A stretch of 64,000 nucleotides of DNA from Ophelia neglecta. Taxonomy: Eukaryota. Shown piece after piece: positions 3,680 through 64,000 of the stretch. Position 1 is the stretch's first letter, and every line of letters starts with the position of its first letter. A model generated the notes under the pieces. That model searched no databases. It saw only the letters and a program-made list of their open reading frames with translations, and was not told the origin of the DNA. The position numbers and the translations under genes are program-made. Location: positions 56,792,001 to 56,856,000 of the forward strand of contig OZ260664.1 of the NCBI GenBank assembly GCA_965285935.1. The letters run 5' to 3'.

Positions 3680-16143
<12,464 letters not shown>

Positions 16144-17358: not shown

Positions 17359-20300
17359 TTAGTCTTTTTTCTCTTCTTCTGTCTTGCCATCATCTGAATA
17401 ACAAATCAATCAAAGTTTCCATATTTGAATGATGAGTCTAAGAACATAAACAAGACTTATGTTCATTTCAAAATTTATATTTGAAAAAATTTCATGTCAT
17501 GAAGGTTTTGAAGAAGATTGAGGCTGCAGGGAATGTATGTTGCATGTTACTTTTAAGATTATTAAGAAGCGCCACTAGATGATACTTATGTTGCATTAAC
17601 ATCTTTGCAGCACCCTTTTATTGCACATCTGTTGCCCAAAAATTGTGCATGGATAACAGTTGTTGTAATTATTTACCCACCAGATTTTGGTACTTCCTTC
17701 TCAAACTCATCACCCCTGTTGTCTTTCCACTCCATGAGCCTTTCCATGCAGGGTCGTGACCCTAACTCCACATGGTTGGCATAGTTCTGTAACATCTTGT
17801 GAGCAGCGGCCACACCAAAGAGGACACGTGAAGAACTGATGGTTTCAGTGTCATTCATGGCTCTGGCAATGTTGTATGATTTATTGAAATAATCCACAGC
17901 TTGATCATACCTTCCCTAGAACAAAGAACACACTTACTTAGATATTGTCATTCTTCTTCAAATTACAAGACATATAACAATGTTAATCCTAACTAAAGCC
18001 CAATGGAAGTAGAATAGCCCACCATACTGACTACCAAATCATTGAAACACATTATGAACATCTTGGATTACTGTGAAAATGACCATGATAGGCAAACTAC
18101 AGCTTAAATATGACTGTACCTTCCAATTCCCAAAGTATCATGTCCTAAATGCATTTAATACATTTAAAAATCTCAAAGCTGATTCAATTAAAAATTTCCT
18201 GTACTCATACTAATTTGGCCTAAGGCACATGTCATACAACTTGGTTACAAATTTATCAAATACTAATTGAGATCCAGGGATCACAGAACTTGTTTACCAC
18301 CTATTTACCATGGCAATATTTCTACAGGACCATTTGATCACAATTTCATTTCCTATATAAGGCACAAATACATTTTAAATGTCTCACTTGTCAAACTGAG
18401 AAATTAAGCACTGCTTTACTAATATACAACAATAATGAATTTATAAATGTGGCTGCTATGGCTGTAAGATATTATTTGATTTCCACCAATTCTGAATAAG
18501 CACAAACTTATGGCCTATGTCCAAATTGGTGTACTGGTAATGCTTTCTGAGTTAATGGTGCTTAAATCATTAGTTCACCATCCACTTACCATGGCAACAG
18601 TATTGAAATTGTCATAAGAAAATTACACCAACAAAATTCCGAAGGAACATATTTAAATCACACATATAAAACACCCCTTTGACTGTAGTAATGGTTTAAG
18701 GCTATACACATTACAAGGAATGCTGACCCCAGCTCAGGACATTTAATTGGGTTACAAAAACAAACCCCACTTTTTAATCCAAATGGTCAGTCTCACATTT
18801 AACAAAGAGCATATTATCAATTAGATACTGAGATATTGAATATTATGGTAGAGTCCAGAGCCTTACCAGAGAATTAAACATTGCTCCCAAGTCACTGCAG
18901 GCTCTGCTGATAGCCTTATCATTTTTACTTTTCTCAGCCACTTCCACAAACATCTCCAGGTACTTTATACTCTCCTCCACCTTTCCCTGGCTCTCGTATG
19001 ATTTCGCTATGGCTTCACAAGCTTTTCCGATGCCATCACTGTCATCAAGTGCTCTGCAGGCCTCAAGGAATCCATTCAAATACTGAAAAGTAAAATTTCC
19101 ATTTCTATGATCATTATGGAATTGTTTCCTACCAGAAGGGCAGATAACCTGTGAAGTTTTAAACTAGCAGCTTTGACACTTTTGAAGTTTACATTTGCCG
19201 AATATACAGCTTACACTGGTGTTGTGTCAGTGCCTCTCAAAGTGGTAAACTTTCACAAACTTAAAAATTGCTAGTCAAAAAGAGATCAACATGGTTACAG
19301 TATTTGATCTCACAGAAGACTTAACTTATTTCGATTTTTAGGATTTATTAGAATACAGCTTTAATACTAACCAACAGAGCAGTATCTGGATCCCCATTCT
19401 TCTCATAAGCCACTCCCAGTCTGTAAGAAGTATCACCCTCCAGCTTTCTGTCCCCACTGGTTTTAGCCATGTCGTAAGCTCTCCTCAGAAATGATAGGTA
19501 ATTCTCTAAATCTCCGTCTGCCTCAAACTGTCTGGCAATGGTGGTGTAGATTCTAGCCAGATGTGTGCATGCTGATGAGTGCATCGTCAGGCCCTCTTCT
19601 AGTGACCAATCTTGCTTGTCTTTGCATAACTCAAAGAATCTCTCAAAATTTTCAGCAGCATCGAAGAAATCTCCTGTGACAAGAATGATAGATGATTGCT
19701 TGATTTAAGCTCTATATTTTGACATGGTCTCATCATTGGGAGACACTCCCATCTTCTTTATTTAGGCATACTGGAACTCATAAGGGGTAGATAAGGTATG
19801 TGGCTATGATACTGTAATGATACTGTAATACGAGGAGTGTGGCTCCTGCATGATGTAATGTACCAGGGATAGATCTGAATATCAATCATTAGCCTTTCAA
19901 TACTTATAAATGCTCTTCATTAAAACTGCAGGCTGTGCCTCATTTAAACCCTATTTTCTAGAACCCATAAACAGCCTGACCATCCGATTATACCCAAATC
20001 TACTCTGATGCTAGATTAACAATATGTCAATCATGGTTTTTACTCACCACTTTCCTCTTGAGCCAGGCCCACATTGCAATGACCCTCGGCTTGCAATCGT
20101 CCCTCGTCGCCTTTTACACAGGCACTGGTAAAAAGGCAATTACTGAAGAAATGGTCAGCTAGCCATTTATCTCCCTTAGCTTGGAAGTACCTTGCTAACT
20201 GGAACTGACATTGGTACATTTCACTAAAATTCTCTGAAACATAAGGACAGTAAGTGTGAACAATTTAAGTATTTAGACCAAACTTTAAGTACTATTCATT

Positions 20301-21158
20301 ATAATTTATATACTGGTATCAATATTTATGACACAATCATTTGTGTGCTGCTTCATGCTTTACTGGTTAAGTGTTACATTATGAACTAGTTGTATTTTTT
20401 ATGTTATACCTTTCCTGTATGCCTGTTCAGCTTGTGTGAGGTATCCTTTCAATGTGTCTAATTTTTCAGGTTCACTTTCCAATAATGTTTGGTTCCATAG
20501 TGCTGATTCAGGTCCTGCATTCCGCCTTTCATCGTTCTGCTGTCTTATCAGTGCAAACAATTCAGCAAATGATTTATGGTATCCATCTTGTAACATGTCT
20601 AGGCATAAGTTGTGTTTGTAAGTGTTCCTATATCTGAAAAGTAAGAATATCATTCATCTTATTAAATGTAGCAACAAATTTGCACCATCAGCACATGTTT
20701 CGAACCAGTAACAACTGGAATGAGTGGAAATGGAAAGCCAAAATTAGGCTTGGTGCATGTACTTCATGTTATTACTGGTACCTATCAAGTGCAGGTATTT
20801 TCAAATTAATAAACTCTTAGCCCCAAGCACTCAATATTTATTAAATTTTACCTTTTTTTATATTACAGAATATAAGGACTGCATAATATGTCATGCAAAA
20901 ATGTTGTCTAGAAAAAAATACCTACTGTGATGTTTCAGATTTCATCAAATCTGGCATTTGTGCTCTCAGAGTGGCTTTTCTCTGTTCCAAGTCTCTTTCT
21001 TTCTTTCCGTGCGTTCTCTTCTTTGCTCCCAGCACATAGACTCTGGCAGAGCTGGCTGCTCCCTGGGAGGGTGGGGAGGGGGCCTTGTGCTGTTTCATCA
21101 TGGGAGACTGCTGGGAGTGCCTATCTCCTTGATGAATAGCAGGCAGGGTGGCTGCCAT
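17359..21158 (-). CDS. TTC29: Tetratricopeptide repeat protein 29 (motile cilium/flagellum), about 476 aa, 7 coding exons
   Basis: Exons (minus): 21158-20926, 20633-20410, 20233-20048, 19673-19372, 19082-18867, 17915-17681, 17393-17359 (1431 nt, in frame, all GT-AG). Diagnostic segments YRNTYKHNLCLDMLQDGYHKSFAELF and DKWLADHFF, plus TPR helices. Confidence 0.9.
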
Positions 21159-21809
21159 GATTAGGTCTGAAAAACAAAAATGTCTATGTTATTTATAAAA
21201 AGTTGGTGCAATATGTAGAAACTGGAAAATTCCTCAGCACAGGTTTTTTTGACATAGGTTCACACTAGGTACATTTATTTAAAAATTTGGCCATTATCTT
21301 GCAATAAAGGTTTACAATAATCAGCTTAGTACAGCAATTCATATTCAGTCAAGTCTGCCAATATCAACATTGACCATCGGGCTATTATCGGTACCTAGAT
21401 TATTAAGTTTTTGTAAGATTTGGGATAAGGAAAGTGATAGGTTCAAATATTTTAAACCCTTTTAAAGAGAATGCATTAGGCCAAGATCATCAACACTGCT
21501 AGAAAAAGTTGTGAGTGGAGATCGCCTGTTGTTAAAATTATGCTGGGTTTGCAGCTCCTCAGCCTGCGCTGGGCTTGACCTAAATTTGTTGTAAAGGTCT
21601 TGCACATTCTGTGTCATATGGCTTCGCCCTAGTATCATTGATTATACATGACATAGTAGTCGTATGGAGTCGGCAACCAACTCTTCTTCCTAGCATTTTT
21701 CATTGGGGTTTTCCTATATCAAGTCCTTTGAAAATGATAATATACTTATTGAAGAGTATAAATGACGCCACAGATTACACAAGGTTGTTTTATTTAATGA
21801 CAAAGAAAG

Positions 21810-22380: not shown

Positions 22381-23529
22381 AGAAAAAAATTACCTTGCCA
22401 ATCAGTTGAACATGGAAGTTAAATCAAAGACACCTATGCCATCAGCTATGAGATACATTATTTTCTATTTTATATGAAATGGATTTTGTTTTTTTGAACC
22501 AAAAAAATAACAACAGGTCCGCAGAAACGACTACAGGAAACCTATCAAGTGTTCTTGAAAGCAACATTTCAGTGTAAATTAGTTTTATTTGCCCTACCTT
22601 CACGTGCCCCTCTTGTGATTTTTACTCAGTAACGTATACAGAACTTCTTAATTAATAAAAGGTTAAAAGTGTAAGTTACGATTATAACGAATCAGTTTTT
22701 GAATGCGAGTTTACTTGAGGAATTGCTGAGCGATATAAGGCAATTTGTTGGTAGTGAATAGATATCATAGGAGGTATAATTATTTAACAAGGGGGGGGGG
22801 ATGCTCCCTCAGGGCGATACGCGGGGTCATTAAATTCAAACCCCTCTTGGAGGTGTGGAGGGGGTTCATGAAGATGAAGTAGCCTTAACCCGTGGAAGAC
22901 CTAAAGCAGGAGGGACCTAGCTATAGGCCGGCCTATACCTCTTAGCTGAGAGTAGGAACCATTACCTTGGGGGGGGGGGGGGGGGGAGGGTAGATTGCAC
23001 TCTTTATATTTTTATAATAGTCATGTGTGTACATCAACTTCAAAATCTTTCCCTTAATACTGACTTGGATGTGGGGAAAACCCAGGAAATATATTCCCTG
23101 AACACTGACTTATGTATTTGAAAATATGACCCTCATGGCAGACTATCTTGAAAATGGAACCCTCAACACTGGATGTGTGCGGAGATGTTTCATTGCTAGA
23201 TGTTGCCACTTTTATGGAAAAGAAGTATCCCATAGCCCATAGGGAAAACAGTGTTTCAGTTAGACCAAGATTTCACACTATTTCCATCCGGATTGGGAAA
23301 AAAAACATGGCAGCTTCATGGTCAGCAAATCTGTAAATGAAAATGGGACTATAAGCACAGACCTTGAGCAAGACTGCATGCTTGTTTAAACCTAATTTTA
23401 ATGATTGTTGGAATTCAAATAATCTTTATCCCAAATTTACAGATGGATATTTTGCTCAGTAAACTGAATAAAGACACTTTAATGCAGATTCTTCATCACT
23501 GTTAGTAATCTTGACTATTTTAAAGGGAA

Positions 23530-26500
23530 ATGAGTGGTGGTCACTGGGGTGAGCTGCCTGTGGTACCAGACACAGAGTCTGGAATAGCAGCTATAGAGAG
23601 GGAACAAATCACAAAGCCTCGTCCAATGGAAGTGGAGGGACCTCCACTACATCAGCCTTCTAGTAAACATTACCCATCCACAAACGAGTAAGTCTTAACT
23701 TTGATATGATATACATGTACATAAAAAATAAAATATCAGGACCCTAAACTTCTGTCCAACAGCCCACATTTAATTATAACAGCATGCTAATTTGTGCTTA
23801 CTGATGGTGCCAGAAATTGTTAATAGTGCATTTATATTTTGCAGCACTTTTTATATTTGGAATCCTAGTCATCGCAAAACTTGCACAAATAAGTACATAC
23901 ACAAATTTTCCTGTTATACAGTATGTACATATATTTTACCGTTATCGGTAATAGATATATGCGTGTCATCAATGTTGAGGTGTACAACATTAGTTCCTGC
24001 TTCATATTTTGTTATTTTATATAAGTGACTTAATTCATATTACCATAGACTGTTGATATCCATTCTATTGCAGACCATATCCAGCAGAACATTTTGTTAT
24101 AGATCCCATCACTCTACACACAGTCAAATTAATCCAATATTCAAGGAAGCTTAGATCCTTGATAAATAGTGTACAACAGCAATTTGAAAATCTGGTAGGT
24201 ATAGCTCGGGTTCATTAATATTATGCCTTTTTGATCACCTCTTCAGTTATAAATCACAAAAATATTTCTCTGTAATTAGCTATTAAGCACACACTGCACT
24301 GAAGACAGTATTGAGCAGAAAATAATTCTAGATGATTCCATAGACTGACAAATCATCTATAATTGTAAGTAACATATAGATCAGAATCACTAAGTTCTTG
24401 GTTTAATACAAAGTGGCAATGTAGTTCTTCATACCAAGTTTCTCCTGCATTTAAAAGATTCAACAATAAGTACAGACTATTATGACACTGTTCTCTATGG
24501 AAATCAGAAAATGAAACAGTCTTAAGAGCCTGATCAAGTTATACAGAGCATGGGCATGACTTTTATCAGTAGTTTCATTTTGTTGTAGAAAACAGAAGAG
24601 GGAGAAATTCCAAATTTTCCACCAGCCCCAGCAATGCCAGAATTTCATGGCAAACTGCCACAACATGTTCATAAGAAACATGTGCCCTTCTTAGCCAAAG
24701 ATCCTCAAAGGTACTCATGTGTCTCTTACTGTAGATGTGGAAATGATGCAAGGAGTTAAATTTGCTAATGTCTAATTCCTCAAGTTAATTCTCACAAAGT
24801 AATTTCCTGATCGGTTTACTATGTAAATCAAACAATTGCAAAGTCAGAAATGTTTGCAGGGGAATGTATTCCACATATTTCACCATTATTATGCACAATG
24901 GGAAATTAATTCCCACAAACATTCCGACTTAACAGAAGTCTGTGCTGAGATACTGGTGGACTGTGTATTTAAATTCCCACCGAAACACATGTATTTTTGT
25001 AGATTCCCAAAAAGAAATTCCAGCAAACATTTCCGACTTTAGAGTAATCGCAGAATTACGTTCCTGGAAAATGTGAGAAATTACCTAAAACTGTTCTTCC
25101 AACAGAAATTTCCACTTTTGCATTATTATACTCTTTACACGTTTTGCAGCAACCAGGTACTTAGATGTATGACATGTATTCAACTAACAAAATTGAATTA
25201 ATAATATTCAATATAAGTGAATTATCAAAAAACTCATTCCTGTCTGATTTTGTTCTTTTCCAGAAAATTTGTTAGAGGCATAGGAAAAGCACCACCTGAA
25301 ATAGACTCAAAAACAAATAGAAAACTTCTGAGAAGATCTGTTTCTGCACTTTGTGCCCATGCTGGGTTTGACAGTAAGAAAAAAAATTCACTAACTAGAT
25401 CTATTCCCATCATATGACTTTACAATAACCACAAAATGTAAACAAATAACCACAAAACAAAGAAGGTAAGATCCTAAATTATGGATATTTTCATTTGGCT
25501 GTATTAGGTAAACTTTCTGCCCAATAGTAGTCAAATAATTCTAAGCCCTTGCATTATACTTCATAAATATGGCTGAGACTTTTTACTGTAGATATGAAAC
25601 CAGAACCATCCCAAAATATCATAGTTTTTGACATTGAAATCTGTATTTTAGGTGCCTGAAATATTTGTATTTTGCTCTGATGCCATTTTCCATAAATATT
25701 TATGTTATTGGCCAGGATCGCTTTTTGGTCACAGCTTTTCTTTGGTTGTTTGTGTATAATTGAAAGGACCTACTGCCTAAAGCAAGAACTTGCAATATTA
25801 ATGATGTAAATTGCACACTGCTTTTCAACAACTCATGGTAAAGCTTGGAAAGTTTTGTAAGGCCATTTTCTTTATTGCTTCAATAAATTATTGGTGCACC
25901 ATCAAAAATATACAAAATTTGTTTTGCTCCCCCCCCCCCCCCCCCCTCTTCTTTGCTTATGGAGCCCTAATCAGAAAAAAAGCTAGATAATATAAGTAGA
26001 TCCTGCTGTTGTAACTCACTTTGGTTTTGAGCTCGCAGAATTAACATAAGAATGTCAGACCATTCAATTGTTGGATTGAGCCTAGATTTTTATAGATTGG
26101 GGGTGGAACGATGCAGGGCATATGCATCTAGAGTATACCTTCTTGTTTGCATTTATTCTTGGGTAAACTGGCAAGCATCAATATTCTGCCTACCTGTACC
26201 TTTTCTGAGGGGTCTCAATCGTTTGTAAATGCTATGTTCCAAAAAAGCACTCTGTTGCTGTTAGATGATGTATTGTCACTGCATTAACAGAAAAAAATGT
26301 GAAAGATAATGATATAAAATGATTAGGAAAATAACCATACTTCTGTCCCAAAATGTCCATTTCAAATTTCAGATTGTGCAGAATCAATCTTAGAAACATT
26401 GACGGACATATGCCAAGAGTACTTCCTACAAATGACACAGCTTTTGAGAAAGGCTGTAGACAGTGAAGCCATCCACGGGGATTCAGGATTTGCAGTAAGT

Positions 26501-34281: not shown

Positions 34282-36854
34282 TCACTTCTTGTGACCAGCC
34301 TGAATAACATCCAATGCACTACTGATGTTTCCATCTTCAGCTTGGATGAGCCTGGTCAGCCAACCTCCATCATCATCAAATCCCATGGCCTTCATGTGTT
34401 CAATGGCTTCATTGATACGCTGTTCTGTTAATAGAAAGGAAAAAAAAATAATACATCTAGGCCTACATAGAACCATCAGGAGAAACCAAAAAGAAGATTT
34501 TTTTTAATGGCAACTATATGCACTTTGGCACAAGTAATAATTTCAATCTATCTTTATCCCAATATCAAAAGAATTTGTAAATAATGTGAGATAGAAAATA
34601 ATTTAGAAACAAAAATACTACTTACCCATGGAGTCCTCCGGGGTCTTTGGGTAAGCTGAAGGTGAATCTGTTTGAGGTTTGCTTGCCTCTGAGCTTTTGA
34701 CAGATGCTTCATCACTTCCAATAATGATCCACTCCTTGTCAGGGCTATCATTGCTTCCCTGCTGGTCATTTCCCTGCAAATAAAGTTCCCTTCTATTGAA
34801 AAAACATTCCACTTTTTCTTGTAACATTAAATAAATTCAAAGCTTCATTTATCTACAATAAAAATTATATAGAAGCCAATCGTTACCTTTCTTTGGCTTT
34901 CATATTCAGAAGCTCCCTTTTCAATACTTTCTTCATTGAAAGTCTGCTTCTTATTTGGGGCTGGCACAGCAGTGTGCTCCGATACTTCCATCTCCACATC
35001 ATGGTTAGTAGAAGGTTCTGACTCATTAGTTGAAAATCCTCCTTGTGCTGCAGCCAATGTTGTTGATGGTTCATGTGACCCCCACCAGCGTGCATGGCCA
35101 GCATGGGCTCCTCCCCAAGGATGGTGACCACGGCCCCAAGGGCCTGAAGACCCCATGGATCCCCACCAACCATGTACACTTCCTCCCCTCAATCCACTCC
35201 GTCCACGATGACCTCTGTGTTCAACATCCACCTCTACATCTATGCCAAAGGGATCTAGCATGGCAGCAACAGACTCACCAACATTTTTCAGATAATCTTC
35301 ATAAGGGCTTACCTCTTCTTCATCACTGGATGATCCACTGGAGGAATCCTTCTTTTTACCATATTTTCCTTTCTTTCCTTTGTCCTTCTCGAAATGTTTA
35401 CCCATCTTTCCTTTCTTGCCTTTACACTTATTTGGGTTTCCATTTGTCTCTCTCCAGTAGCGTCTCCAGCAGTGTTTCATATACTTTCTCATGTGTGGAG
35501 GATATGCTCCTGGGGGCCAAAAGGGCAATTCACCCTCAGGGCCCTCTTCACTATGGGGCTGAGGAGGTGGTGGATATCCATCATGAGGGGCTGGAGGTGG
35601 TGGGGGACCTCCTTCATACTGGGGAGGAGGAGGTCCACCATATGATGGTGGCGGTGGAGGAGGAAATGTTCCTGGAAAAGGAGGTGCTACATGGAAGAAT
35701 CTCGGCATACTGGCCAAAAAGGGGTAGATCTGGGGCCATGTGATCTTCGTCATGTTGTGTCCACTGTGAAGACCTTTTCCCTTGCAGTCTTCACACAGAT
35801 CAAAGTCTGGGCAGACAATACACTTGAATCGGAACCCCTTGACAGGTGCGTCACAGCCATCGCAGACCACACCTGGGTGGATCACATTATGAGACTGATC
35901 ATTTTTGGGTTCTGTTGGTTTGGGTTCACTCTCTAAAATAAAGAAACAGAGGCTGTTTACTTGTTTATACATTACTGGTATATGCGATCATGCAAAAGCG
36001 ATCCCTACGATAGAAACTGGATACAAGAGAAATGGAAAACACAATTTAATGAGGCTCTGTTAGTAAAAGAAATATTATTACCTCATCAAGTACCAGTAAC
36101 ATATTTGCAAACCTTACCTTTGATGTATACCCTTAATATTGCATCATTCACATGGCCAAGTGCTTCAATCAATTCATCATCACTTGAGAAAGCAATGTAG
36201 TCATTGTCCTGATCTGAAATAAAACACAAGTGTGGTATTTATCCTACCAGTACACTGGTCTGATATCACATGACTACAATTTGCACATTATATATTATAC
36301 AAATATTGGCTTGAAGAGGAAGCAATGAGCAATGTGCTAAATTCGCAATATGCAATGTAATACATGTATATGCAAATAACTTGCTTCTGGCTAGGGTATT
36401 ACTTATTGCTTGTGCAAAGCAAGCCAATATTCAAAAGTTGGGAATAATGTCATGATTGACGTTTGGGTTTTTGCCTCAAATTTTCACAAATTTGAGTTGT
36501 TATTTCTTGGTGTGGTAAAAATATGACTGGTAAAAGGCAAATTTTACCCAATACCTCTTCTGGACTGGGACAAGTAAATTTTAAAATTATAGATTTTTTC
36601 CTTGTTTCTCTTTTTGATGCCCAATATTAGCAAGTGTAAATTATGAGAAGTAGTTTATCCTATTAAAGCCTACAGTGTCACTGACCTTTCCAGAACAAAC
36701 TAAAATCCTTAGCCAGGTGAGGAAACACCAGTGCTATCTTTCTGTACAGATATTCATATTTAGGAGTAGCGCTTTCCTCCCCAGCAAACCGGCGGATTTC
36801 TGTATTATCTCGCTTTTCTAAATAACCAAGGTACGCCTTTACAGTTAATGACAT
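34282..36854 (-). CDS. SQSTM1: Sequestosome-1/p62 selective autophagy receptor, about 533 aa, 5 exons
   Basis: Exons (minus) 36854-36686, 36213-36118, 35932-34887, 34773-34626, 34424-34282 (1602 nt, in frame). PB1 (MSLTVKAYL...EIRRF; OPCA DQDNDYIAFSSDDEL), ZZ finger (HPGVVCDGC...CIVCPDFDLCEDC), YLKNVGESVAAMLDPFGIDVEVDVEH, LIR-like EWIII, UBA (MKAMGFDDDGGWLTRLI). Confidence 0.96.
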
Positions 36855-37404
36855 TTTGCTACACTCGTTATCTGTCAAAATGGGCTAAGTTCGTAAATTC
36901 AACTTAACTGAACAGGTGCCCGTGTGACTCTCTAATTGACAACCATCGCTCTTGTTTATTGCAGTAGTCACGGCGCATGTTTACAAACATTAGGTGATGT
37001 CACAATTCCCGTTCCTGTGCGGCGCAATGTAATTCTGCGCGTGCCGGTGACATCAGCTAGGTGTAAAAGAAATTGTTTCCAATTGTTCATTCGTAATAAA
37101 AAGGCTATTTCAGCTTGTATCATTTTTCAATTGGCAGAAAATAAATTGCTTGTAACGTAACGTTTACTGACAACATTTTTCTTGTATTAATTTGGAACGA
37201 AGGGTAATAAAACAGGAAGTTTCATGATGAGCGATTCATGAAGAAACGGGGGCACTCCCCCTTCTGCACCGGGCATTGCTCGTACGTTCGCATTTGCATA
37301 CCCATGGTGGCACGTGACTTACATCACCCGATGTTGTTGTGAAGTCTGATTGGTGGAATTCCCGTGGTGTCACCTCGTGGGCTAGACCAGAACAAACCTT
37401 GAAG
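36855..37404. promoter_or_regulatory. Compact bidirectional promoter/5'UTR interval between SQSTM1 and SREBP
   Basis: 550 bp between divergent ATGs, CpG-rich. Motifs: TGTTTAC (FoxO-type) 36978-36984; TGATGTCA 36995-37002 and TGACATCA 37048-37055 (CRE/ATF-like); CAGGAAGT (ETS) 37213-37220; ATTTGCAT 37292-37299; GGCACGTGAC (E-box/CLEAR-like) 37309-37318; ATCACCCGAT (SRE-like) 37323-37332; inverted CCAAT 37349-37353. Confidence 0.75.
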
Positions 37405-40400
37405 ATGGCTGACCAGCTTGGTTGGCCCTTCTCCTCCGACTCTTTACAAGATATTGGGACAAGTTTATCAACTACTAATGATTTGGATAATGTGTCATTC
37501 AACGATTTAGATGGTAAGTTATTTATTGACAAATTTATTGACATTCAATACAAATCACACTAGTTTACACACCGCAATAAAATAACGACAAGTTTACCAA
37601 AGCACTGCAGTACATGCTGTACTCATGTACTCAGTGGTGCTCAAGGCTGTCTCCTTGTACTATCACTATATTGTAATTTTACGCCGAGGCAGCTTTCGCC
37701 ACATTTTCTTTTTACACTCATCCTCCATAGATCTCCCATATATGTGGTGTTTATAACCTGCCCTAAGTGTGCTGGTCACGGTCAGTTTATACTTTATACT
37801 ATTATTATTAAATTCAGGCAGGTCGAGTTAATATGCGCCATCGATCTCCATGATTCGCACATTATGATTATTGTTGTCATTGAAGCCTCCCAAACTCTTA
37901 AGTAAATGTAGATCTAGTGCAAAATAATACCTTGTCCTTTACTACACAGTAACCACAATAACCTGCTTATCGAAACGGTTTATATATAACAATGCAAAAG
38001 CCCCCCACCAATATTAAAAAAGGATAGTTAACCTGTATGTCGTAAGGTCGGCAACTACAAAAAAGTATTCTTGTCTATTTTTAACGTTAACAAGACAGGA
38101 GAGCAGAAAGTATTCTTGCCTATTTTTAACATAAGCCAGAACAGCAGTCTGGCTAAATATAACACAATATTTCATATACTGATCTAAATTTTGCAGCCAC
38201 TCTCAAACAATTACAGATGAGTAATGATTTTAGTTAAACTGAGCCCCCCCCCCTCCCCCTCTTTAACTTTTTTAATCCTTAAACACTTAAGATAGCCTGA
38301 AATGGCTTGCAGAAAAACGGTTACAATTTTTTTGCTGCCCTATTGTAAGTCCCCCGCCCCAATTTTACCTAGCCCAAAAAGTAATTGCTTTCATGTAGCC
38401 CCAGGGGGGGGGGGGGGGGGGCATTACATGATAACAAGTGCATTATATGATAAGAAAACTAATGTATTTTTGGGTTTCTTGCAGATATTGTTAAATACAT
38501 CAATCAAGATGCATCACTTGGGGGTGACCTTTCTGGCGATCTGTTTGGAGGACAGCTGAATCTGAACAGCATAAAGCAAGAAAACGAAGTTGTCACTACC
38601 CAAGATGAAGAACTGCCGGTGGATAATTTGGACTTGTTTTCATTCGCTAATAACCAAAATGGTACCAATACACCCAACACAACAAAGACTAGTACAAGCA
38701 GTACACCTTTACTGTCGCAGGCCATTGCGGCTCCTAATTCCCCCTTGAGCTCCCATGAATCACAGGCTCTTCTACAACAACAAGCACTACAAACACGCAT
38801 TGCAGCCACCAAGGCAAAGTCTGAGCCTGCCACCCAACAGACTCGCAGTGTTGTCACAACTCAAACAAGACAGTTCACTTTACATTCTCAGCTTGCACAG
38901 CACTTGACTGCTCCGCTTTCTCCTGTGCAGCAACAGTCACCCCCTCCACAGGTGGTGCCTCAGCAGCTAGCCACTGCCCAAATCTTGCAGCCTGCTCCAG
39001 TGGCATCCCCAGTGCAAATACAGATCAGCAATCAGCCAACATCAGTTGCGGCTCCGCCTAAAACACAGAAAATCATTGTGCAGCAAGTCCAACAGGCTGT
39101 GCCAACAGTACAAAGTTTTCAAGGTCAGCCACACCAGATAATTATACAGAATGCCCCCCAGCCTGCCTATAATACTCTGACCATACCTCAGATTCAGCAG
39201 GTAAGCTCTCCCTTGTAAAAATGTTTTAAATTGTGTTTACAACTGTTTAAATCTGTAGTTAAAGTTGTGTCTGTCAAATGGGGTTATACCTGTAAACGAG
39301 GGGCAAAAATTGTCTTAAAAGAAGTCTTAAAACAACAGTTCATGGTTGGGAGGGTAAATTCTATGGTTGGTCGGGAAACTGGAAACTAACCGTTTTTTTT
39401 TTTTACAAATAAACGAAAATGATGAATAAAGGGTTTATTCTTGCAGTTAGAGCCTAGAAGTATATTAAATACCGGGTATTTGTTCAATTCTTTTCAGTTG
39501 ATCCTACAGTCTCAATTGAAAACAGAGCCAGGAACAAACATTGTTACCATCACGACGACTCCTGCAACAAGTGTTGCTCAGACTACCACAACACCTATTT
39601 TGCAAAATGCAGTTGTGTCCACTGCCAATAGTACAGTCACCACAGGTATACCTGTTCAGATGATGGATACAAGTGAAAAAGTTCCCATTAATAGGATCAC
39701 TAGCAAACAGAGTCCCGGAACACCACCTAGGGGCGAGAAGAGAACAGCCCACAATGCAATTGAGAAGAGGTACCGACTGAGCATCAATGATAAAATACTT
39801 GAATTACAAGACTTGGTTGTGGGCCCAGAGGCAAAGGTTTGTAAAATTTTACCATTAAATGTAGATAGACTACAACACAGTGTATAAAGTTCCCAATTAA
39901 TCTTCATGGAAGTCATTTTTGCTTTCAGACATCTAAGACTTTTATCTATCCAATTCCAATCAGAGGTGGGCCTAAAAGTGTCGCTGTTCATGTAATTCAA
40001 TTTGATTTTCAGCTAAACAAGTCTGCCATTCTAAGGAAGGCCATTGATTACATTAGATATCTCCAAACAACCAATTCTCGACTGAAGCAGGAAAACACTG
40101 CCCTTAAATTGGCTGCTGCTGGGAGCACGGATGTGAAGAGCCTTCTTGCTGCAGTGAATCGTGAGCGAGAGAGAGTTACCTCTGAATCTAACTCCTTGCC
40201 TGACCTAGCGACTCCCCCGGACAGTGATCAAGGTAGCCCAGGTGCTCCTACTTCACCATCGTCCGGAGTCGAGAGCTATGGCTCAAATCCAGGCAGTCCA
40301 TCCAGTGTAGACGATATGAGCAGTAATGAGAATTCTTTGAAGCTGGATGGCTTTGGAGGCATGCTGGACAGGTCTCGCATGGCACTGTGTGTCTTCATGT

Positions 40401-43400
40401 TCGGCATCATGTTCTTCAATCCATTCAGCTCTCTGTTCACTGGTGGCAAATTTGGTGGTCATAATGTAGACTTTAACAAAGCCCATCAAGGAGGCAGGAT
40501 GCTGCAAGATGTTGGGGATATGTCTGGTAAATGAAAAACTTGTTGATATCATTATATTGAATAGTTCTAATAAATGCGCGTAAGATAATGAAAATATTGT
40601 CAACCTATGGTCTCAATTGCAGACTCTCATATGTTTACATTTATAGATTGTGATGTGCCTAAATTATTTGATTAATGACAATTATTTCTTTCCATACTTA
40701 TTATTTTATTGACTTTGGAACTGTTTTGGAAAATTATGATTCTGAGCTACAACATTTAAGAATCATTTTGCCAAAAAGTAAATGCTTCTACAGAGGCTGG
40801 TAGAGCCTGGTTGACCTACTTTTTTTTTACCTCCGCTGTTTTTCCACAGGGACCCAAATTGGTTGGTGGGATTGGATGATGCCAACAATCTTGATGTGGT
40901 TGATTAATGGTATCATAGCAGCTGTAGTGATGGCCAAACTGTTTGTGTTTGGAGAACCAGTCACCAAGTCTCACTCAGAACAGTCAGTCAGTTACTGGAG
41001 GTTCCGGAAACAAGCCGATGTGGAAATGTCCAGGGTAAGCACACATGAAATCATGTAGTCTGTTAAACCATTTAAATTTTGTGGGGGCTATTAAAAGAAA
41101 ATTAAGTGTGTATTTGTGGGTGGGGGGGGGGGGAATGTAATTGGAAAATATATAACAGACTTAAAAAGGGCGTGTGTGTGTGGGGGGGCAATTACCCCCC
41201 CCCCCAGCTCCAGCCCCCGACATCTAAAAATGGAATAGCCCTTAAGATATTTAGTATATCTATTGATTACATTTCTATCAAGCCGATTCATCTTCGCTTA
41301 TTGTTTCTTTCTTTCTTTTCACAATAGTTTTTTTGTGTCTATAGGGTGACTTCCCCAAGGCAGAGATGCACCTTCGAAGCTGTCTAAGAGCAGTAGGCCG
41401 CCCGCTACCAACATCAAAGTTTGATCTGACTGCCAGCCTGTTCTGGCAAATGTTGCGCCAGATTCTTCATCGTGTGTACATTGGACGTTGGTTGGCCAAC
41501 AAAGCTGGCAGCTTTGGGAATGGTGTGAGCAAAGACGATGTGAAGACATCGGCAAGGGATGCTGCTGTTGTCTACCACCAGTTACACCAGCTGCATCTGA
41601 CCGGGCATACCAACAATGGTGTGGCCAATGGACTGAACCTGGCCTTGTGCGCTGTCAATCTAGCAGAGGCTGCTGGTGATGCCATGCCAACTACAAAGTT
41701 GATGCAGATCTTCAGCACCACTGCTATCAACATCAAACTTGACTTTCCCTCTGTGCAGATCTTAGCAGTAAGCTCATTACAATTCACTTACACATGCCCC
41801 CGGCTATTAGAATATATTCTGTCAGGCAGTGTGCACTTTAAGAAGTCAAAACAAGGTCATCTTGAAGGTAAAATTAGTGTTAGCGTTTTTGGAACACAGT
41901 AAGGGTTATTTTTATTTAAACTGTCCCTCTACAGTGCAAGAATTCTCTTCATTTCAGCGTTACTTTCTCAGCCGCACACGTCGAGTAAGCGCTAATGATG
42001 CCGTTATCCCGCCGTCGTTAAAATGGCTCTGTCATCCCCTTGGGCACCGATTTTTCGTTGACGGCAATTGGACATGTGAGGGGGCTACTTCTATTTACAG
42101 CAGCCGTGGCAATGATGCTGATCCACTATCACATGTGACCCAGGCATTCAGAGAGTTTATTTTGGAAAAAGCCCTTTATTCGTTAGTTACCCCAGGCTAT
42201 CAAAACAACAACATAATTGGACCTAATAAGGGAAGTGACGGGTAAGGGCAGAATCTTTGCAATTCACATTTCATTCAAGTAGTAAAGATAATTGTAGTAA
42301 AATTGTGTCTCCTGTTGAATATTACACATTTGAGGTCAGTTCCATCTATATTTTGATTTTGCATATCAATGTGCAGTTATTATGCATTGTTACATTGATA
42401 TTGCAGAGCTCCCCACTCGGCTGACGCGTTACAGTATGTGCAGCTTTTGTCTGAATGCTCAAAGGCTGCAAGTGTTTCCAATGGCACAGCCTTTGCCATA
42501 GGGTGTGATCTCACAACCAGTGTAGACGAGGTGTCTAGGTGGTGGGCTGCTGCAGTTGGAATTGCCACCTATTGGCTTACTGGAGATGACAGTGCTGCTG
42601 AAAGGCTTTATACTATCATGGATTCCTTTCCAAAACAGCTTCAAAACTCTAATAATCCCCAGCCTAGAAGTTTATATCTCGCCTATAAGGCCAGGAAAGG
42701 GCTTTTGAATGACACAAATAATTCTTGCAACTACAACTGCATGAAACAGTGTGATAGAGCAGGAGAGCTGCTCAGGGAAAGCCTCATTCTTTCATCAGAA
42801 AAACATCATCATGGAATGATTGAGGTGAGTAAAGAGCATTACTCTTGGGCATTTTGTATATTTGTGGGACTTGTAAAGTGTACAGAACACATGTGGCAGC
42901 TTAGCTGGACAAAAGCGAATATTCCCAGCTACAGTGGTGCATTGTAGTTGCATTGCATTTTTAAAGCTGTGCAGTGCTTCTGCAGTGCAACCCCTGTGGT
43001 GGGTTCACACATCAAAGACCCCATATCACTCTGAATTGAAACAAAACTGATAGAATAATTAAAGATGTTCACATCAGTACCTGTTTATTAATGTAAGAGT
43101 GTGAAGTATGTATATTTTTAAGTGTTTTATGTGTATGATTATAGGCAGTCCAGTTATTGGTATGTGACTGGTTGTTGAGCACCCGTACAGAGGTGTGGCA
43201 GAGGGACCAGGGAGAGGCAGAAATCTCCTCAACAAACATGACGCAGGAAGAGCTACAATCCTTCCAGAAAGACCTGGGTAGTTTGAGAAAGCTTTCTCAA
43301 CAGCTCAAGGCTGCTTTGCCAAGGGTGAGTAATGCTTGATATTATGATGCTTCCCTTACCCATTTGACGGCCTGAAGTGAAAATAGTGGGGGGGGAAGCA

Positions 43401-44045
43401 TCATTTAGAAATTTGGTTTAAAATCCCCCCCCCCACCCCCCATTACATCTTTTAATGTAATGGCCCTTATCACAAACGTGGAAAAGTAGAATATCCTGTT
43501 GGTGTAACTAGTATGCTGCAAATTTTGTTTTCCAAATTTTAATATCCGAGTTCATTATTAATTTTACTGTCTGCAGGTTTTTCTCCATGAGGCCACAGCT
43601 CGTCTCATGGCTGGTGCCAGCCCAGCAAAAACACAGCAGCTTCTGGACCGGAGCCTCCGGAAGAAAAATGGACATTGTGACAGAGGTACTGTAATAAAGT
43701 CCTGCGTTATGTTTAAAGAACATTCTCGCTCCTTTGTAAAGTTGTATTTGGACAACGTTTTTCCATGCATTAAATCTTGAAACAAATTTTGACTTTTGCC
43801 ATACAGATGGTGATGACTGCCTGGAGGGTGAAGTGGGTGAAAGAGAACATGCAACAGCCCTAGTTATGGCGTGTCGTCATCTTCCCAGTCAGATTTCCAC
43901 TCCAGGTCAACGTGCCACCATGCTAGCAGAAGCTGCTAAAACATATGAAAAGATAGGGGATAGGAAAGCGCTACAAGACTGTCGGAACATGATGATGAAG
44001 TTTGGTAGTGGCATTGCCAACAACCCTCTACCTGTGCGGTGTTAA
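37405..44045 (+). CDS. SREBF: Sterol regulatory element-binding protein (SREBP), about 1171 aa, 11 exons
   Basis: Exons 37405-37513, 38485-39200, 39498-39836, 40013-40526, 40850-41034, 41345-41767, 41958-42241, 42407-42824, 43145-43324, 43577-43685, 43807-44045 (3516 nt, in frame). Acidic N-terminus and Q/T-rich region. The bHLH-Zip has the SREBP-specific Tyr ([21 protein letters not shown]). DRSR precedes TM1, which contains NP (S2P). Luminal RMLQ is an S1P-type site. TM2 and the regulatory C-terminus follow ([25 protein letters not shown]). Confidence 0.97.
42928..43000 (+). ncRNA. mir-33: miR-33 precursor in SREBP intron 8 (mature 5p 42937-42957)
   Basis: GTGCATTGTAGTTGCATTGCA matches the known mature miR-33 sequence. 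The complementary arm TGCAGTGCTTCTGCAGTGCAA lies at 42970-42990, with basal stem GCTACAG/CTGTGGT. It sits in the sense orientation inside the host intron 42825-43144. Confidence 0.97.
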
Positions 44046-63859: not shown

Positions 63860-64000
63860 CTGAATGTTCCAGGAAAGGAACACTACCTCTCCAATATATA
63901 TGTTGACAGCACGCAGGGAATTTGCCATATCATTAATGATGTAGTTAGCCAACTGCTTAAAGGTATCTGTTATTCTTATCATAAACAGTGCTTTACCTTT

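What the first reader, a model, noticed from the sequence alone, without database searches (positions are those of the whole stretch)
34282..44045. p62/SQSTM1 and SREBP (with intronic miR-33) sit head-to-head on a shared promoter of about 550 bp: candidate autophagy-lipogenesis co-regulation unit
Seen: the two ATGs (36854 on -, 37405 on +) are 550 bp apart, so both TSSs and 5'UTRs probably fit in this interval. It packs a CLEAR-like E-box, an SRE-like element and an inverted CCAAT within 45 bp, plus FoxO- and CRE-type sites on the p62 side. Established: vertebrate SREBF promoters autoregulate through SRE plus NF-Y; SQSTM1 is a TFEB/MiT (CLEAR) target; miR-33 is co-transcribed with SREBP and restrains cholesterol efflux and autophagy/lipophagy genes; human SQSTM1 and SREBF1/2 are on different chromosomes. 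Inference: here sterol-status (SREBP) and starvation (TFEB/FoxO) inputs could drive a selective-autophagy receptor, the lipogenic master regulator and miR-33 from one bidirectional switch. I am not aware of this linkage being described. It is the best candidate for a new system in the window.
Basis: partly seen in the sequence, partly recalled or inferred. Interest (0 to 1): 0.78.

Follow-up and report, generated by a model that had tools for sequence, protein, structure and literature searches.

The report
Ancient head-to-head SREBP–p62 gene pair
The lipid regulator SREBP and the autophagy receptor p62 lie back to back 550 bases apart here, as they do in an annelid, a brachiopod, a scallop, a sea urchin and amphioxus, so the pairing dates to early bilaterian animals; whether the two genes are actually regulated together is not shown.

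Summary
A complete p62/SQSTM1 gene (minus strand, ATG 36854) and the genome's only SREBP gene (plus strand, ATG 37405, miR-33 in a late intron) are divergent, with 550 bp between their start codons.

The same head-to-head pair occurs in Owenia (annelid), Lingula (brachiopod), Mizuhopecten (mollusc), Strongylocentrotus (echinoderm) and Branchiostoma (chordate), with gaps of 412-3529 bp. It was not found within 10 kb in Mytilus, Haliotis, Lineus, Antedon or a wasp.

One non-coding block is conserved across phyla. It is about 60 bp and lies 15-90 nt upstream of the SREBP ATG. It has four parts: a TGACG-type half-site, ATCAnCCGAT, an NF-Y-type CTGATTGGT and CTCGTGGTG.

The "single shared switch" reading is not supported:
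- The E-box is not conserved at its position.
- The p62-side FoxO/bZIP block is kept by two p62 paralogs that have no SREBP neighbour.
- Gaps vary widely between species.
- No p62 3' flank carries a miR-33 seed site.
- No expression data could be obtained.

The best reading is two separable promoters back to back in an ancient conserved gene pair. I found no paper describing the linkage. miR-33 inside SREBP is already known.

The parts
34282..36854 (-). p62/SQSTM1 gene. Coding exons 36854-36686 (PB1 start), 36213-36118 (PB1 end), 35932-34887 (ZZ plus a Pro/Gly/Lys-rich linker), 34773-34626 (LIR-like EWIIIG in an acidic context), 34424-34282 (UBA; stop TGA 34284-34282). AATAAA lies 27 nt after the stop.
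36967..37028 (-). p62-proximal promoter block. In p62 sense it reads GGAACGGGAA, GTGACATCAC (bZIP/CRE-like), TGTTTGTAAACA (forkhead/FoxO-type), CATGCGC. It is conserved with the promoters of p62 paralogs at G000:C7:77.2 Mb and C1:142.3 Mb.
   Evidence: Alignment A3; paralog exon maps.
37048..37055 (.). Second TGACATCA (CRE/MARE-like) site, followed by GC (GTGACATCAGC).
   Evidence: It is not conserved in the paralog alignment.
36855..37404 (.). Intergenic interval of 550 bp between the two start codons.
   Evidence: Orthologous intervals: Mizuhopecten 412 bp, Lingula 658, Branchiostoma 1133, Owenia 1838, Strongylocentrotus 3529.
37311..37318 (+). E-box CACGTGAC. It overlaps the position of the conserved (G)TGACG half-site of other species.
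   Evidence: CACGTGAC recurs elsewhere in the Lingula and Owenia intergenic regions.
37323..37372 (+). Core of the conserved SREBP-proximal module: ATCACCCGAT (37323-37332), a 13-nt spacer, CTGATTGGT (37346-37354, NF-Y-type inverted CCAAT), then CCGTGGTGTCA (to 37372; CTCGTGGTGCTA in Lingula, scallop and contig L023).
   Evidence: Alignments A2 and A4; pattern hits; blastn HSPs.
37405..44045 (+). SREBP gene. Exon 1 is 37405-37513. Later coding exons lie inside ORFs 38619-39218, 39441-39887 (bHLH), 40109-40534 (DRSR...NP, first membrane span), 40876-41058, 41366-41902, 41829-42245, 42438-42947, 43157-43339, 43607-43780 and 43833-44045. Exact splice sites after exon 1 were not determined.
   Evidence: It is the only bHLH exon of this type in the genome.
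42932..42996 (+). mir-33 hairpin in the SREBP intron between the exons in ORFs 42438-42947 and 43157-43339. It holds GTGCATTGTAGTTGCATTGCA, which I recognise from memory as the miR-33-5p sequence.
   Evidence: The hairpin is in the same relative position in Lingula and Mizuhopecten.

Best explanation
This is an ancient divergent gene pair that already existed in the common ancestor of protostomes and deuterostomes. SREBP, with its intronic miR-33, and p62/SQSTM1 point away from each other across a short spacer.

The spacer holds two separable promoter modules, not one integrated switch:
1. A roughly 60-bp SREBP-proximal module fixed 15-90 nt upstream of the SREBP ATG. It consists of a TGACG-type bZIP half-site, ATCAnCCGAT, an NF-Y-type CTGATTGGT box 13-14 nt further on, and CTCGTGGTG. 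I infer it is SREBP's own core/proximal promoter, probably NF-Y dependent and possibly autoregulated by SREBP. Vertebrate SREBF promoters are known to carry an SRE plus an NF-Y site.
2. A p62-proximal module within about 180 bp of the p62 ATG, with forkhead and bZIP-type sites. In other species it has a TATA box plus ARE/TRE/CRE-type sites. It works without SREBP next door, as the two p62 paralogs show.

Where the spacer is only 0.4-0.7 kb (this genome, Lingula, scallop), the two modules probably share one nucleosome-free region. Cross-talk is then plausible, for example NF-Y acting in both directions. That is inference.

Shown: gene identities, linkage and orientation in six genomes, conservation of the SREBP-side block, and conservation of the p62-side block among paralogs.
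Inferred: which factors bind, where transcription starts, and any co-regulation.
For: - Linkage and orientation: Lingula L001, Owenia L010 and Mizuhopecten L012, Strongylocentrotus L013, Branchiostoma L014.
- SREBP-side block: alignments A2 and A4. The composite pattern hits once per locus, always at the SREBP start, including amphioxus, which was not used to derive it. There are only 3 hits in the 762-Mb genome against 4 for the control.
- An unbiased all-against-all blastn of the intergenic regions gives this block as the only significant cross-phylum match: amphioxus-Lingula 79% over 58 bp, E 2e-7; amphioxus-window 75% over 57 bp, E 4e-6.
- CCAATCA is present in 6 of 6 intergenic regions against 1.28 expected.
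- A seventh copy of the block precedes an SREBP-like first exon on contig L023.
- There is no RNA-structure signal, and the 1-nt spacer length differences argue against coding.
- p62 module: a 62-bp block is shared with paralog promoters that lack the SREBP module.
- The spacer varies from 412 to 3529 bp while each module stays next to its own gene.
Against: - There are no transcript data.
- The ATCAnCCGAT element is not a canonical SRE. TCACNCCAC matches 0 of 6 intergenic regions. The base that would complete the TCAC half-site varies (T, G or C) between species, and only the scallop has a near-canonical ATCACCCCAT.
- The module lies so close to the ATG that it may be partly transcribed.
- The sea urchin has only a CCAATCA in the opposite orientation and no full module.
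- p62-side motifs across phyla are similar in type only. Exact k-mer tests do not beat shuffles, and several motif picks were post hoc.
- The paralogs may have diverged in function, so their independence from the SREBP module does not prove that the linked copy is independent of it.
Confidence: 0.6

Rival explanations
1. The interval is one bidirectional switch in which sterol status (SREBP via SRE plus NF-Y) and starvation signals (TFEB at the E-box, FoxO, CREB) jointly drive p62, SREBP and miR-33. Selection for that co-regulation has kept the genes together.
For: - Head-to-head orientation is kept in six genomes of five or more phyla for over 500 million years.
- The gap is 0.4-0.7 kb in three of them.
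- NF-Y boxes are a typical feature of bidirectional promoters (my own knowledge).
- Conserved ancient 5'-5' pairs are enriched for co-regulation (PMC3514665).
- CACGTGAC recurs in 3 of 6 intergenic regions against 0.10 expected.
Against: - The E-box is not conserved at its position.
- The conserved block travels with the SREBP ATG even when p62 is 1.1-1.8 kb away.
- p62 paralogs keep the FoxO/bZIP block without the SRE/CCAAT module.
Mytilus is ambiguous: a tandem p62 array fills the 10 kb upstream.
- There are no miR-33 sites near p62.
- There is no expression evidence.
Confidence: 0.17
2. Neutral retention. The adjacency is simply a surviving piece of ancestral gene order in slowly rearranging genomes, and there is no regulatory coupling between the two genes.
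For: - The neighbourhood is conserved beyond this pair. The TPR (RMD1-3-like) gene, convergent with p62, is next to p62 in Lingula, Antedon and the sea urchin. It lies 13 kb away, inverted together with a Bromo_TP gene, in this window. A shared promoter cannot explain that.
- All species that keep the pair are known (my own knowledge) as slowly evolving genomes.
- The pair is lost in about half of the lineages sampled.
Against: - SREBP-p62 is kept in more of the sampled genomes (6) than p62-TPR (3 adjacent plus 1 displaced).
- The orientation is invariant.
- Divergent pairs with short spacers are the class for which constraint is best documented (PMC3514665).
Confidence: 0.23

Closest known systems
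Conserved ancient microsyntenic pairs (CAMPs) in 5'-5' orientation (Irimia et al. 2012, PMC3514665), for example the HSP60/HSP10 bidirectional pair
   Same: These are unrelated genes kept adjacent and divergent across protostomes and deuterostomes. They have short intergenic DNA in several lineages and a conserved non-coding element in the spacer.
   Different: This pair is not named in that paper's main text, and its supplement was not available. The pair is broken in humans, and so probably in vertebrates generally, so human-centred surveys would miss it. Co-expression is untested, and the conserved element belongs to one side only.
Vertebrate SREBF promoters autoregulated through an SRE; SRE plus inverted CCAAT (NF-Y) composites of sterol-regulated genes such as FPP synthase and HMG-CoA synthase
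   Same: A TCAC-type element lies 13-14 nt from an inverted CCAAT box directly upstream of an SREBP gene. SREs on SREBP promoters and autoregulatory loops are described in PMC11156753. The FPP synthase SRE-3 (CTCACACGAG) resemblance is from memory.
   Different: The element is ATCAnCCGAT, not ATCACCCCAC, and its fifth base varies. Two further conserved blocks (TGACG upstream, CTCGTGGTG downstream) have no described counterpart that I know of. Binding by SREBP or NF-Y is untested.
miR-33 hosted in an SREBF intron (mammals; oyster Crassostrea gigas, PMC4138081)
   Same: A mir-33 hairpin lies in a late SREBP intron on the host strand. It is in the same relative position in Lingula and scallop.
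   Different: Nothing new here. No miR-33 seed match was found downstream of the neighbouring p62.
Known transcriptional control of SQSTM1/ref(2)P by Nrf2/CncC (ARE), TFEB (CLEAR), FoxO and ATF4
   Same: The p62 side carries forkhead and bZIP-type sites here. It carries ARE-type (RTGAYNNNGC) sites 215-240 nt from the p62 ATG in Lingula, Owenia and amphioxus, and TRE/CRE sites in scallop, amphioxus, Owenia and urchin.
   Different: There is no exact ARE in this window. The motif counts do not beat shuffles (ARE in 4 of 6 species, P about 0.13; FoxO in 3 of 6, P about 0.16). Only conservation among paralogs supports function here.

Membership tests
p62/SQSTM1 (sequestosome-1 / Ref(2)P) | N-terminal PB1 domain | tested here: met
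   Exons 1-2 align at 40-72% to the first roughly 90 residues of proteins carrying PF00564. Pfam on the 58-residue exon alone gave no hit.
p62/SQSTM1 (sequestosome-1 / Ref(2)P) | ZZ-type zinc finger | tested here: met
   PF00569, E 2.7e-11, 43.5 bits against a cut-off of 21.4.
p62/SQSTM1 (sequestosome-1 / Ref(2)P) | C-terminal UBA domain | tested here: met
   PF16577 UBA_5, E 2.3e-11, 44.1 bits against a cut-off of 27.
p62/SQSTM1 (sequestosome-1 / Ref(2)P) | LC3-interacting region (acidic W-x-x-L/I) | tested here: inconclusive
   SPDKEWIIIGSDE is read in exon 4. The motif is seen, but binding is untested.
SREBP | bHLH-Zip with the SREBP-specific tyrosine in the basic region | tested here: met
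   PF00010, E 4.8e-7. HNAIEKRYR is read in ORF 39441-39887.
SREBP | Membrane hairpin with a site-2 protease motif (DRSR...NP) and a C-terminal regulatory domain | tested here: met
   [23 protein letters not shown] is read in ORF 40109-40534. C-terminal exons match Lingula, scallop, Owenia and amphioxus SREBP at 41-64%. There is no Pfam model hit for that part.
mir-33 (RF00667) | Covariance-model score above the gathering threshold; sense orientation in an SREBP intron | tested here: met
   68.2 bits against 50, full-length model match, on the host strand.
Bidirectional promoter | Divergent genes with less than 1 kb between transcription starts | tested here: inconclusive
   The ATGs are 550 bp apart. 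TSSs are unknown, and run and read data were unavailable.
Bidirectional promoter | Correlated expression or shared functional elements | not testable with these tools
   No expression data could be obtained. The conserved elements segregate to one gene each.
Conserved ancient microsyntenic pair | Adjacency and orientation kept in distant phyla | tested here: met
   The pair is present in 6 of 11 genomes examined, spanning Annelida, Brachiopoda, Mollusca, Echinodermata and Chordata plus this genome.
SRE plus NF-Y sterol-response composite | Canonical SRE (TCACNCCAC / ATCACCCCAC) | tested here: not met
   0 of 6 intergenic regions hold TCACNCCAC. The window has ATCACCCGAT (8 of 10) and the scallop ATCACCCCAT (9 of 10).
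SRE plus NF-Y sterol-response composite | Adjacent inverted CCAAT box of NF-Y type | tested here: met
   TGATTGG is present in all five non-urchin species and in L023, 44-59 nt from the ATG.
CLEAR element (TFEB/MiT site GTCACGTGAC) | Palindromic GTCACGTGAC, conserved in orthologous promoters | tested here: not met
   The window has GGCACGTGAC (9 of 10). At the same place other species have CGTGACGCAA, ACGACGTAA or GTGACGAAA. CACGTGAC occurs elsewhere in Lingula and Owenia.

The most novel reading that the evidence does not exclude
SREBP and p62 have been kept head to head since the bilaterian ancestor because they form a selected co-regulation unit. On this reading the conserved NF-Y/SRE-like module near the SREBP start also drives or gates p62, coupling membrane-lipid synthesis to selective autophagy at the level of one promoter region. 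The roughly 60-bp block would then be one of the few cis-regulatory elements alignable between chordates and spiralians.
Probability: 0.22. Interest if true: 0.82.

Novelty: new member of a known kind. Interest (0 to 1): 0.6.

Why it matters
p62 and SREBP are central nodes of autophagy and lipid homeostasis. In mammals they are studied as unlinked genes. Having been physical neighbours with a common spacer across most of bilaterian history suggests an ancestral regulatory relationship. That can now be tested in tractable animals such as amphioxus, sea urchin, scallop, Owenia and Lingula.

Separately, a promoter block alignable between amphioxus, a brachiopod, annelids and a mollusc is rare. 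It gives a defined target for asking whether SREBP autoregulation through NF-Y composites predates vertebrates.

Against this, conserved ancient pairs number in the hundreds. The evidence here favours two modular promoters over one switch.

Tried and rejected
I did not try to get reads any other way, so read laying was never used.
- Global alignment of the window and Lingula intergenic regions was uninformative. Local alignment and pattern methods were needed.
- Exact shared k-mers across six intergenic regions: only the CCAAT box beats shuffles.
- The p62-side block of this genome is not alignable to p62 promoters of other phyla.
- miR-33 targeting of the neighbouring p62: no 6-, 7- or 8-mer seed match in the window. 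There is nothing beyond three isolated 6-mers, 0.6-1.5 kb downstream, in the other species.
- The other two genome-wide hits of the composite pattern have no recognisable gene within 1.5 kb. Together with the control count they look like chance.
- An RNA structure in the conserved block is rejected: -2 kcal/mol and no covariation.
- Amphioxus isoform X2 and the Pomacea p62 were not on record. Amphioxus was recovered through a cluster member.
- Literature searches for the linkage found nothing relevant. The oyster gene-number neighbours gave nothing.
All searches were exon by exon. For that reason SREBP could not be used as an anchor in the length-limited protein search, and the costly representative search was not run.
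Full report
**What is in the window**

The sequence is from a 762-Mb chromosome-scale animal genome; the window is G000:C7:56792001-56856000. Earlier notes of this scan point to an annelid or other lophotrochozoan. I did not verify that.

On the minus strand lies a complete p62/SQSTM1 gene of five coding exons:
- 36854-36686
- 36213-36118
- 35932-34887
- 34773-34626
- 34424-34282

I read these from splice sites on the reverse strand and from exon-by-exon matches to named sequestosome-1 proteins. Pfam finds ZZ (2.7e-11) and UBA_5 (2.3e-11). Exons 1-2 align to the PB1 part of relatives, and exon 4 holds an acidic EWIIIG motif.

On the plus strand, SREBP starts at ATG 37405 ([12 protein letters not shown]...). 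It has a bHLH exon with HNAIEKRYR (HLH 4.8e-7), a DRSR...NP membrane segment, and C-terminal exons ending at 44045. Rfam places mir-33 at 42932-42996 on the host strand (68.2 bits, gathering score 50). The two ATGs are 550 bp apart.

Every search used single exons by reference.

**The motifs**

- CACGTGAC at 37311-37318
- ATCACCCGAT at 37323-37332
- ATTGG at 37349-37353
- TGTTTAC at 36978-36984
- TGATGTCA at 36995-37002
- TGACATCA at 37048-37055

Singly they are close to chance. So the question became whether anything is conserved.

**Is the linkage conserved?**

I used p62 proteins found by word search as anchors. For each I fetched the gene with 10 kb on either side (12 look-ups) and checked neighbours by tblastn with the window's own exons.

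The head-to-head pair is present in five named species. The gap is measured from ATG to ATG.

| Species | Phylum | Locus | Gap (bp) | Note |
|---|---|---|---|---|
| Lingula anatina | Brachiopoda | L001 | 658 | mir-33 in the same intron |
| Owenia fusiformis | Annelida | L010 | 1838 | |
| Mizuhopecten yessoensis | Mollusca | L012 | 412 | mir-33 present |
| Strongylocentrotus purpuratus | Echinodermata | L013 | 3529 | |
| Branchiostoma belcheri | Chordata | L014 | 1133 | |

SREBP was not found within 10 kb upstream of p62 in five other species:
- Mytilus californianus, where tandem p62 copies lie upstream instead
- Haliotis rufescens
- Lineus longissimus
- Antedon mediterranea
- the wasp Microplitis mediator

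Two specific genes being adjacent by chance has a probability of the order of 1e-4 per genome. The arrangement is therefore inherited from the protostome-deuterostome ancestor and was lost repeatedly.

**What is conserved in the spacer**

By eye, then by alignment (A2; A4), one block stands out directly upstream of the SREBP ATG. Its parts, in order:
- (G)TGACG(T/C)(A/G)AAA
- ATCAnCC(G/C)AT(G)
- a 13-14 nt spacer
- (C)TGATTGG(T/C)
- a 4-8 nt spacer
- C(T/C)CGTGGTG

The pattern ATCANCCSAT-N11-16-TGATTGG hits once in each of the window, Lingula, scallop, Owenia and amphioxus loci, always at that place. Amphioxus was fetched after the pattern had been written, so it is an independent test.

In the whole 762-Mb genome the pattern occurs 3 times, against 4 for a reversed control. 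The other two hits have no gene nearby. The composite is therefore rare, and its orthologous position in five phyla is conservation, not chance.

An unbiased all-against-all blastn of the intergenic regions gives this block (-90 to -15 from the SREBP ATG) as the only significant cross-phylum match:
- amphioxus-Lingula: 79% over 58 bp, E 2e-7
- amphioxus-window: 75% over 57 bp, E 4e-6
- Lingula-Owenia: 72% over 67 bp, E 1.7e-5

A three-block version of the pattern found one further copy in the metagenome collection, contig L023. There it again sits about 20 nt upstream of an ATG that opens an SREBP-like first exon (METNETNWFSNDNLPDL...). No p62 lies in the 855 bp available upstream.

The block shows no RNA-structure signal. 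Its spacers differ by single nucleotides, so it is not coding.

The sea urchin has only a CCAATCA in the opposite orientation at -130, and no full module.

**What the block is likely to be**

CTGATTGGT(C)(A/G) is a textbook NF-Y site.

ATCAnCCGAT resembles an SRE. The scallop has ATCACCCCAT, 9 of 10 positions of the LDL-receptor SRE given in PMC11156753. The window's ATCACCCGAT is close to the SRE-3 type that I recall from FPP synthase. However, the fifth base varies (T, G or C), and the canonical TCACNCCAC is absent in all six species. SREBP binding is therefore plausible but unproven; I put it at about even odds.

The window's E-box overlaps the position where the other species have a TGACG half-site. 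As a CLEAR-type E-box it is specific to this genome. CACGTGAC does recur elsewhere in the Lingula and Owenia spacers (3 of 6 species against 0.10 expected; a post-hoc test).

**The p62 side**

This genome has three p62 copies but only one SREBP. I fetched the other two copies and mapped all five exons in each. I then aligned their upstream DNA with the window's (A3).

A 62-bp block is shared. It corresponds to window 36967-37028 and, in p62 sense, reads ...GGAACGGGAA..GTGACATCAC..AATGTTTGTAAACATGCGC... Similarity stops before the SREBP-side module. The paralogs have a TATA box and TRE/CRE sites that the window copy lacks.

They belong to a p62 promoter that functions without SREBP next door.

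Across phyla, p62 promoters share only types of site:
- a TATA box 86-165 nt upstream of the p62 ATG in Lingula, scallop, Owenia and amphioxus
- ARE-type sites at 215-240 nt in three species
- TGCGCAGC at 232-293 nt in three species
- CRE/TRE sites

None of these is alignable or clearly above shuffles.

**Other links tested**

No miR-33 seed match lies within 1.5 kb downstream of the stop codon of p62 in the window. In the eleven other p62 genes examined there are only three isolated 6-mers, 0.6-1.5 kb downstream. The window's p62 has an AATAAA 27 nt after its stop, so its 3'UTR is probably very short.

**Wider neighbourhood**

A TPR gene with RMD1-3-like hits is convergent with p62 in Lingula, Antedon and the sea urchin. 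In this window it lies at 17.7-21.2 kb. Together with a Bromo_TP gene (23.5-26.5 kb) it is inverted relative to Lingula. A shared promoter cannot explain that conservation. This is the main argument for the neutral-retention rival.

**Reading**

- Shown: an ancient divergent SREBP-p62 pair, a deeply conserved SREBP-proximal promoter block, and a separable p62 promoter block.
- Inferred: NF-Y binding, possible SREBP autoregulation, and possible cross-talk where the spacer is short.
- Not shown: any co-regulation.

TSSs and expression therefore remain open.

**Known or new**

miR-33 in an SREBF intron of a mollusc is published (PMC4138081). SREs on SREBP promoters and autoregulatory loops are textbook (PMC11156753). 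Conserved ancient divergent pairs are a known class of about 600 (PMC3514665).

Full-text searches found no paper linking SQSTM1 and SREBF by synteny or by a shared promoter. The microsynteny paper's main text does not name them, and its supplement was not available.

I class the finding as a new member of a known kind, with a notable extra: the cross-phylum promoter block.

Noticed in passing
G000:C7:77215663-77219960 (L021 3664-7960) and G000:C1:142257571-142261765 (L022 4572-8765): There are two further p62/SQSTM1 paralogs with all five exons. Their big exons are 67% and 56% identical to the window's, and the second has two TAA stops inside the match. Their promoters share a 62-bp block with the window copy and carry a TATA box plus TRE/CRE sites.
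   Followed up: partly
window 17685-21173 (-) and 23527-26497 (+): A TPR gene (RMD1-3-like hits in the urchin ortholog) and a Bromo_TP-domain gene. The same two genes flank p62 in Lingula, and the TPR gene also does so in Antedon and the sea urchin. Here the pair is inverted as a block and lies 8-13 kb from p62.
   Followed up: partly
L001 1840-1907 and 3455-3522: Lingula has two identical mir-33 hairpins. A segment of about 1.6 kb of SREBP (one exon plus the hairpin) is tandemly duplicated. This is either a real duplication or an assembly artefact.
   Followed up: no
L010 about 9016-9033 and L013 about 8107-8124 (positions 985-1002 and 1877-1894 counted from the p62 ATG): Owenia and the sea urchin share GTGTTCCGA(A/G)ATAGATTT (17 of 18) in the middle of their long SREBP-p62 spacers. 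In both it lies beside TGACGT sites (blastn E 0.35). It is a possible further element or a chance match.
   Followed up: no
L010 about 9036-9042 and 9663-9669: Owenia carries two extra CTGATTGGT boxes in the spacer, besides the one at the SREBP start. One of them lies next to GTCACGTG.
   Followed up: no
L002 1-8323; Sinanodonta proteins P0010, P0036, P0118: Bivalves have tandem arrays of p62 genes. Mytilus has at least two further copies upstream of the anchor gene, and Sinanodonta has three consecutively numbered genes. In these species SREBP, if still linked, would lie beyond the 10 kb examined.
   Followed up: no
window 4800-15500 (+): A multi-exon ABCB-type ABC transporter gene (ABC_membrane 1.3e-16; Walker/signature-like exon at 15153-15467).
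   Followed up: no
window 62500-64000: Strong AT skew (-0.35) and long overlapping ORFs with repeated Cys/His-rich units on both strands. This looks like a tandem repeat array at the window's end.
   Followed up: no
L023 (contig JAAUYG010292181.1) 840-1030: A short contig in the metagenome collection carries the SREBP promoter block and an SREBP-like first exon of an unidentified animal.
   Followed up: partly
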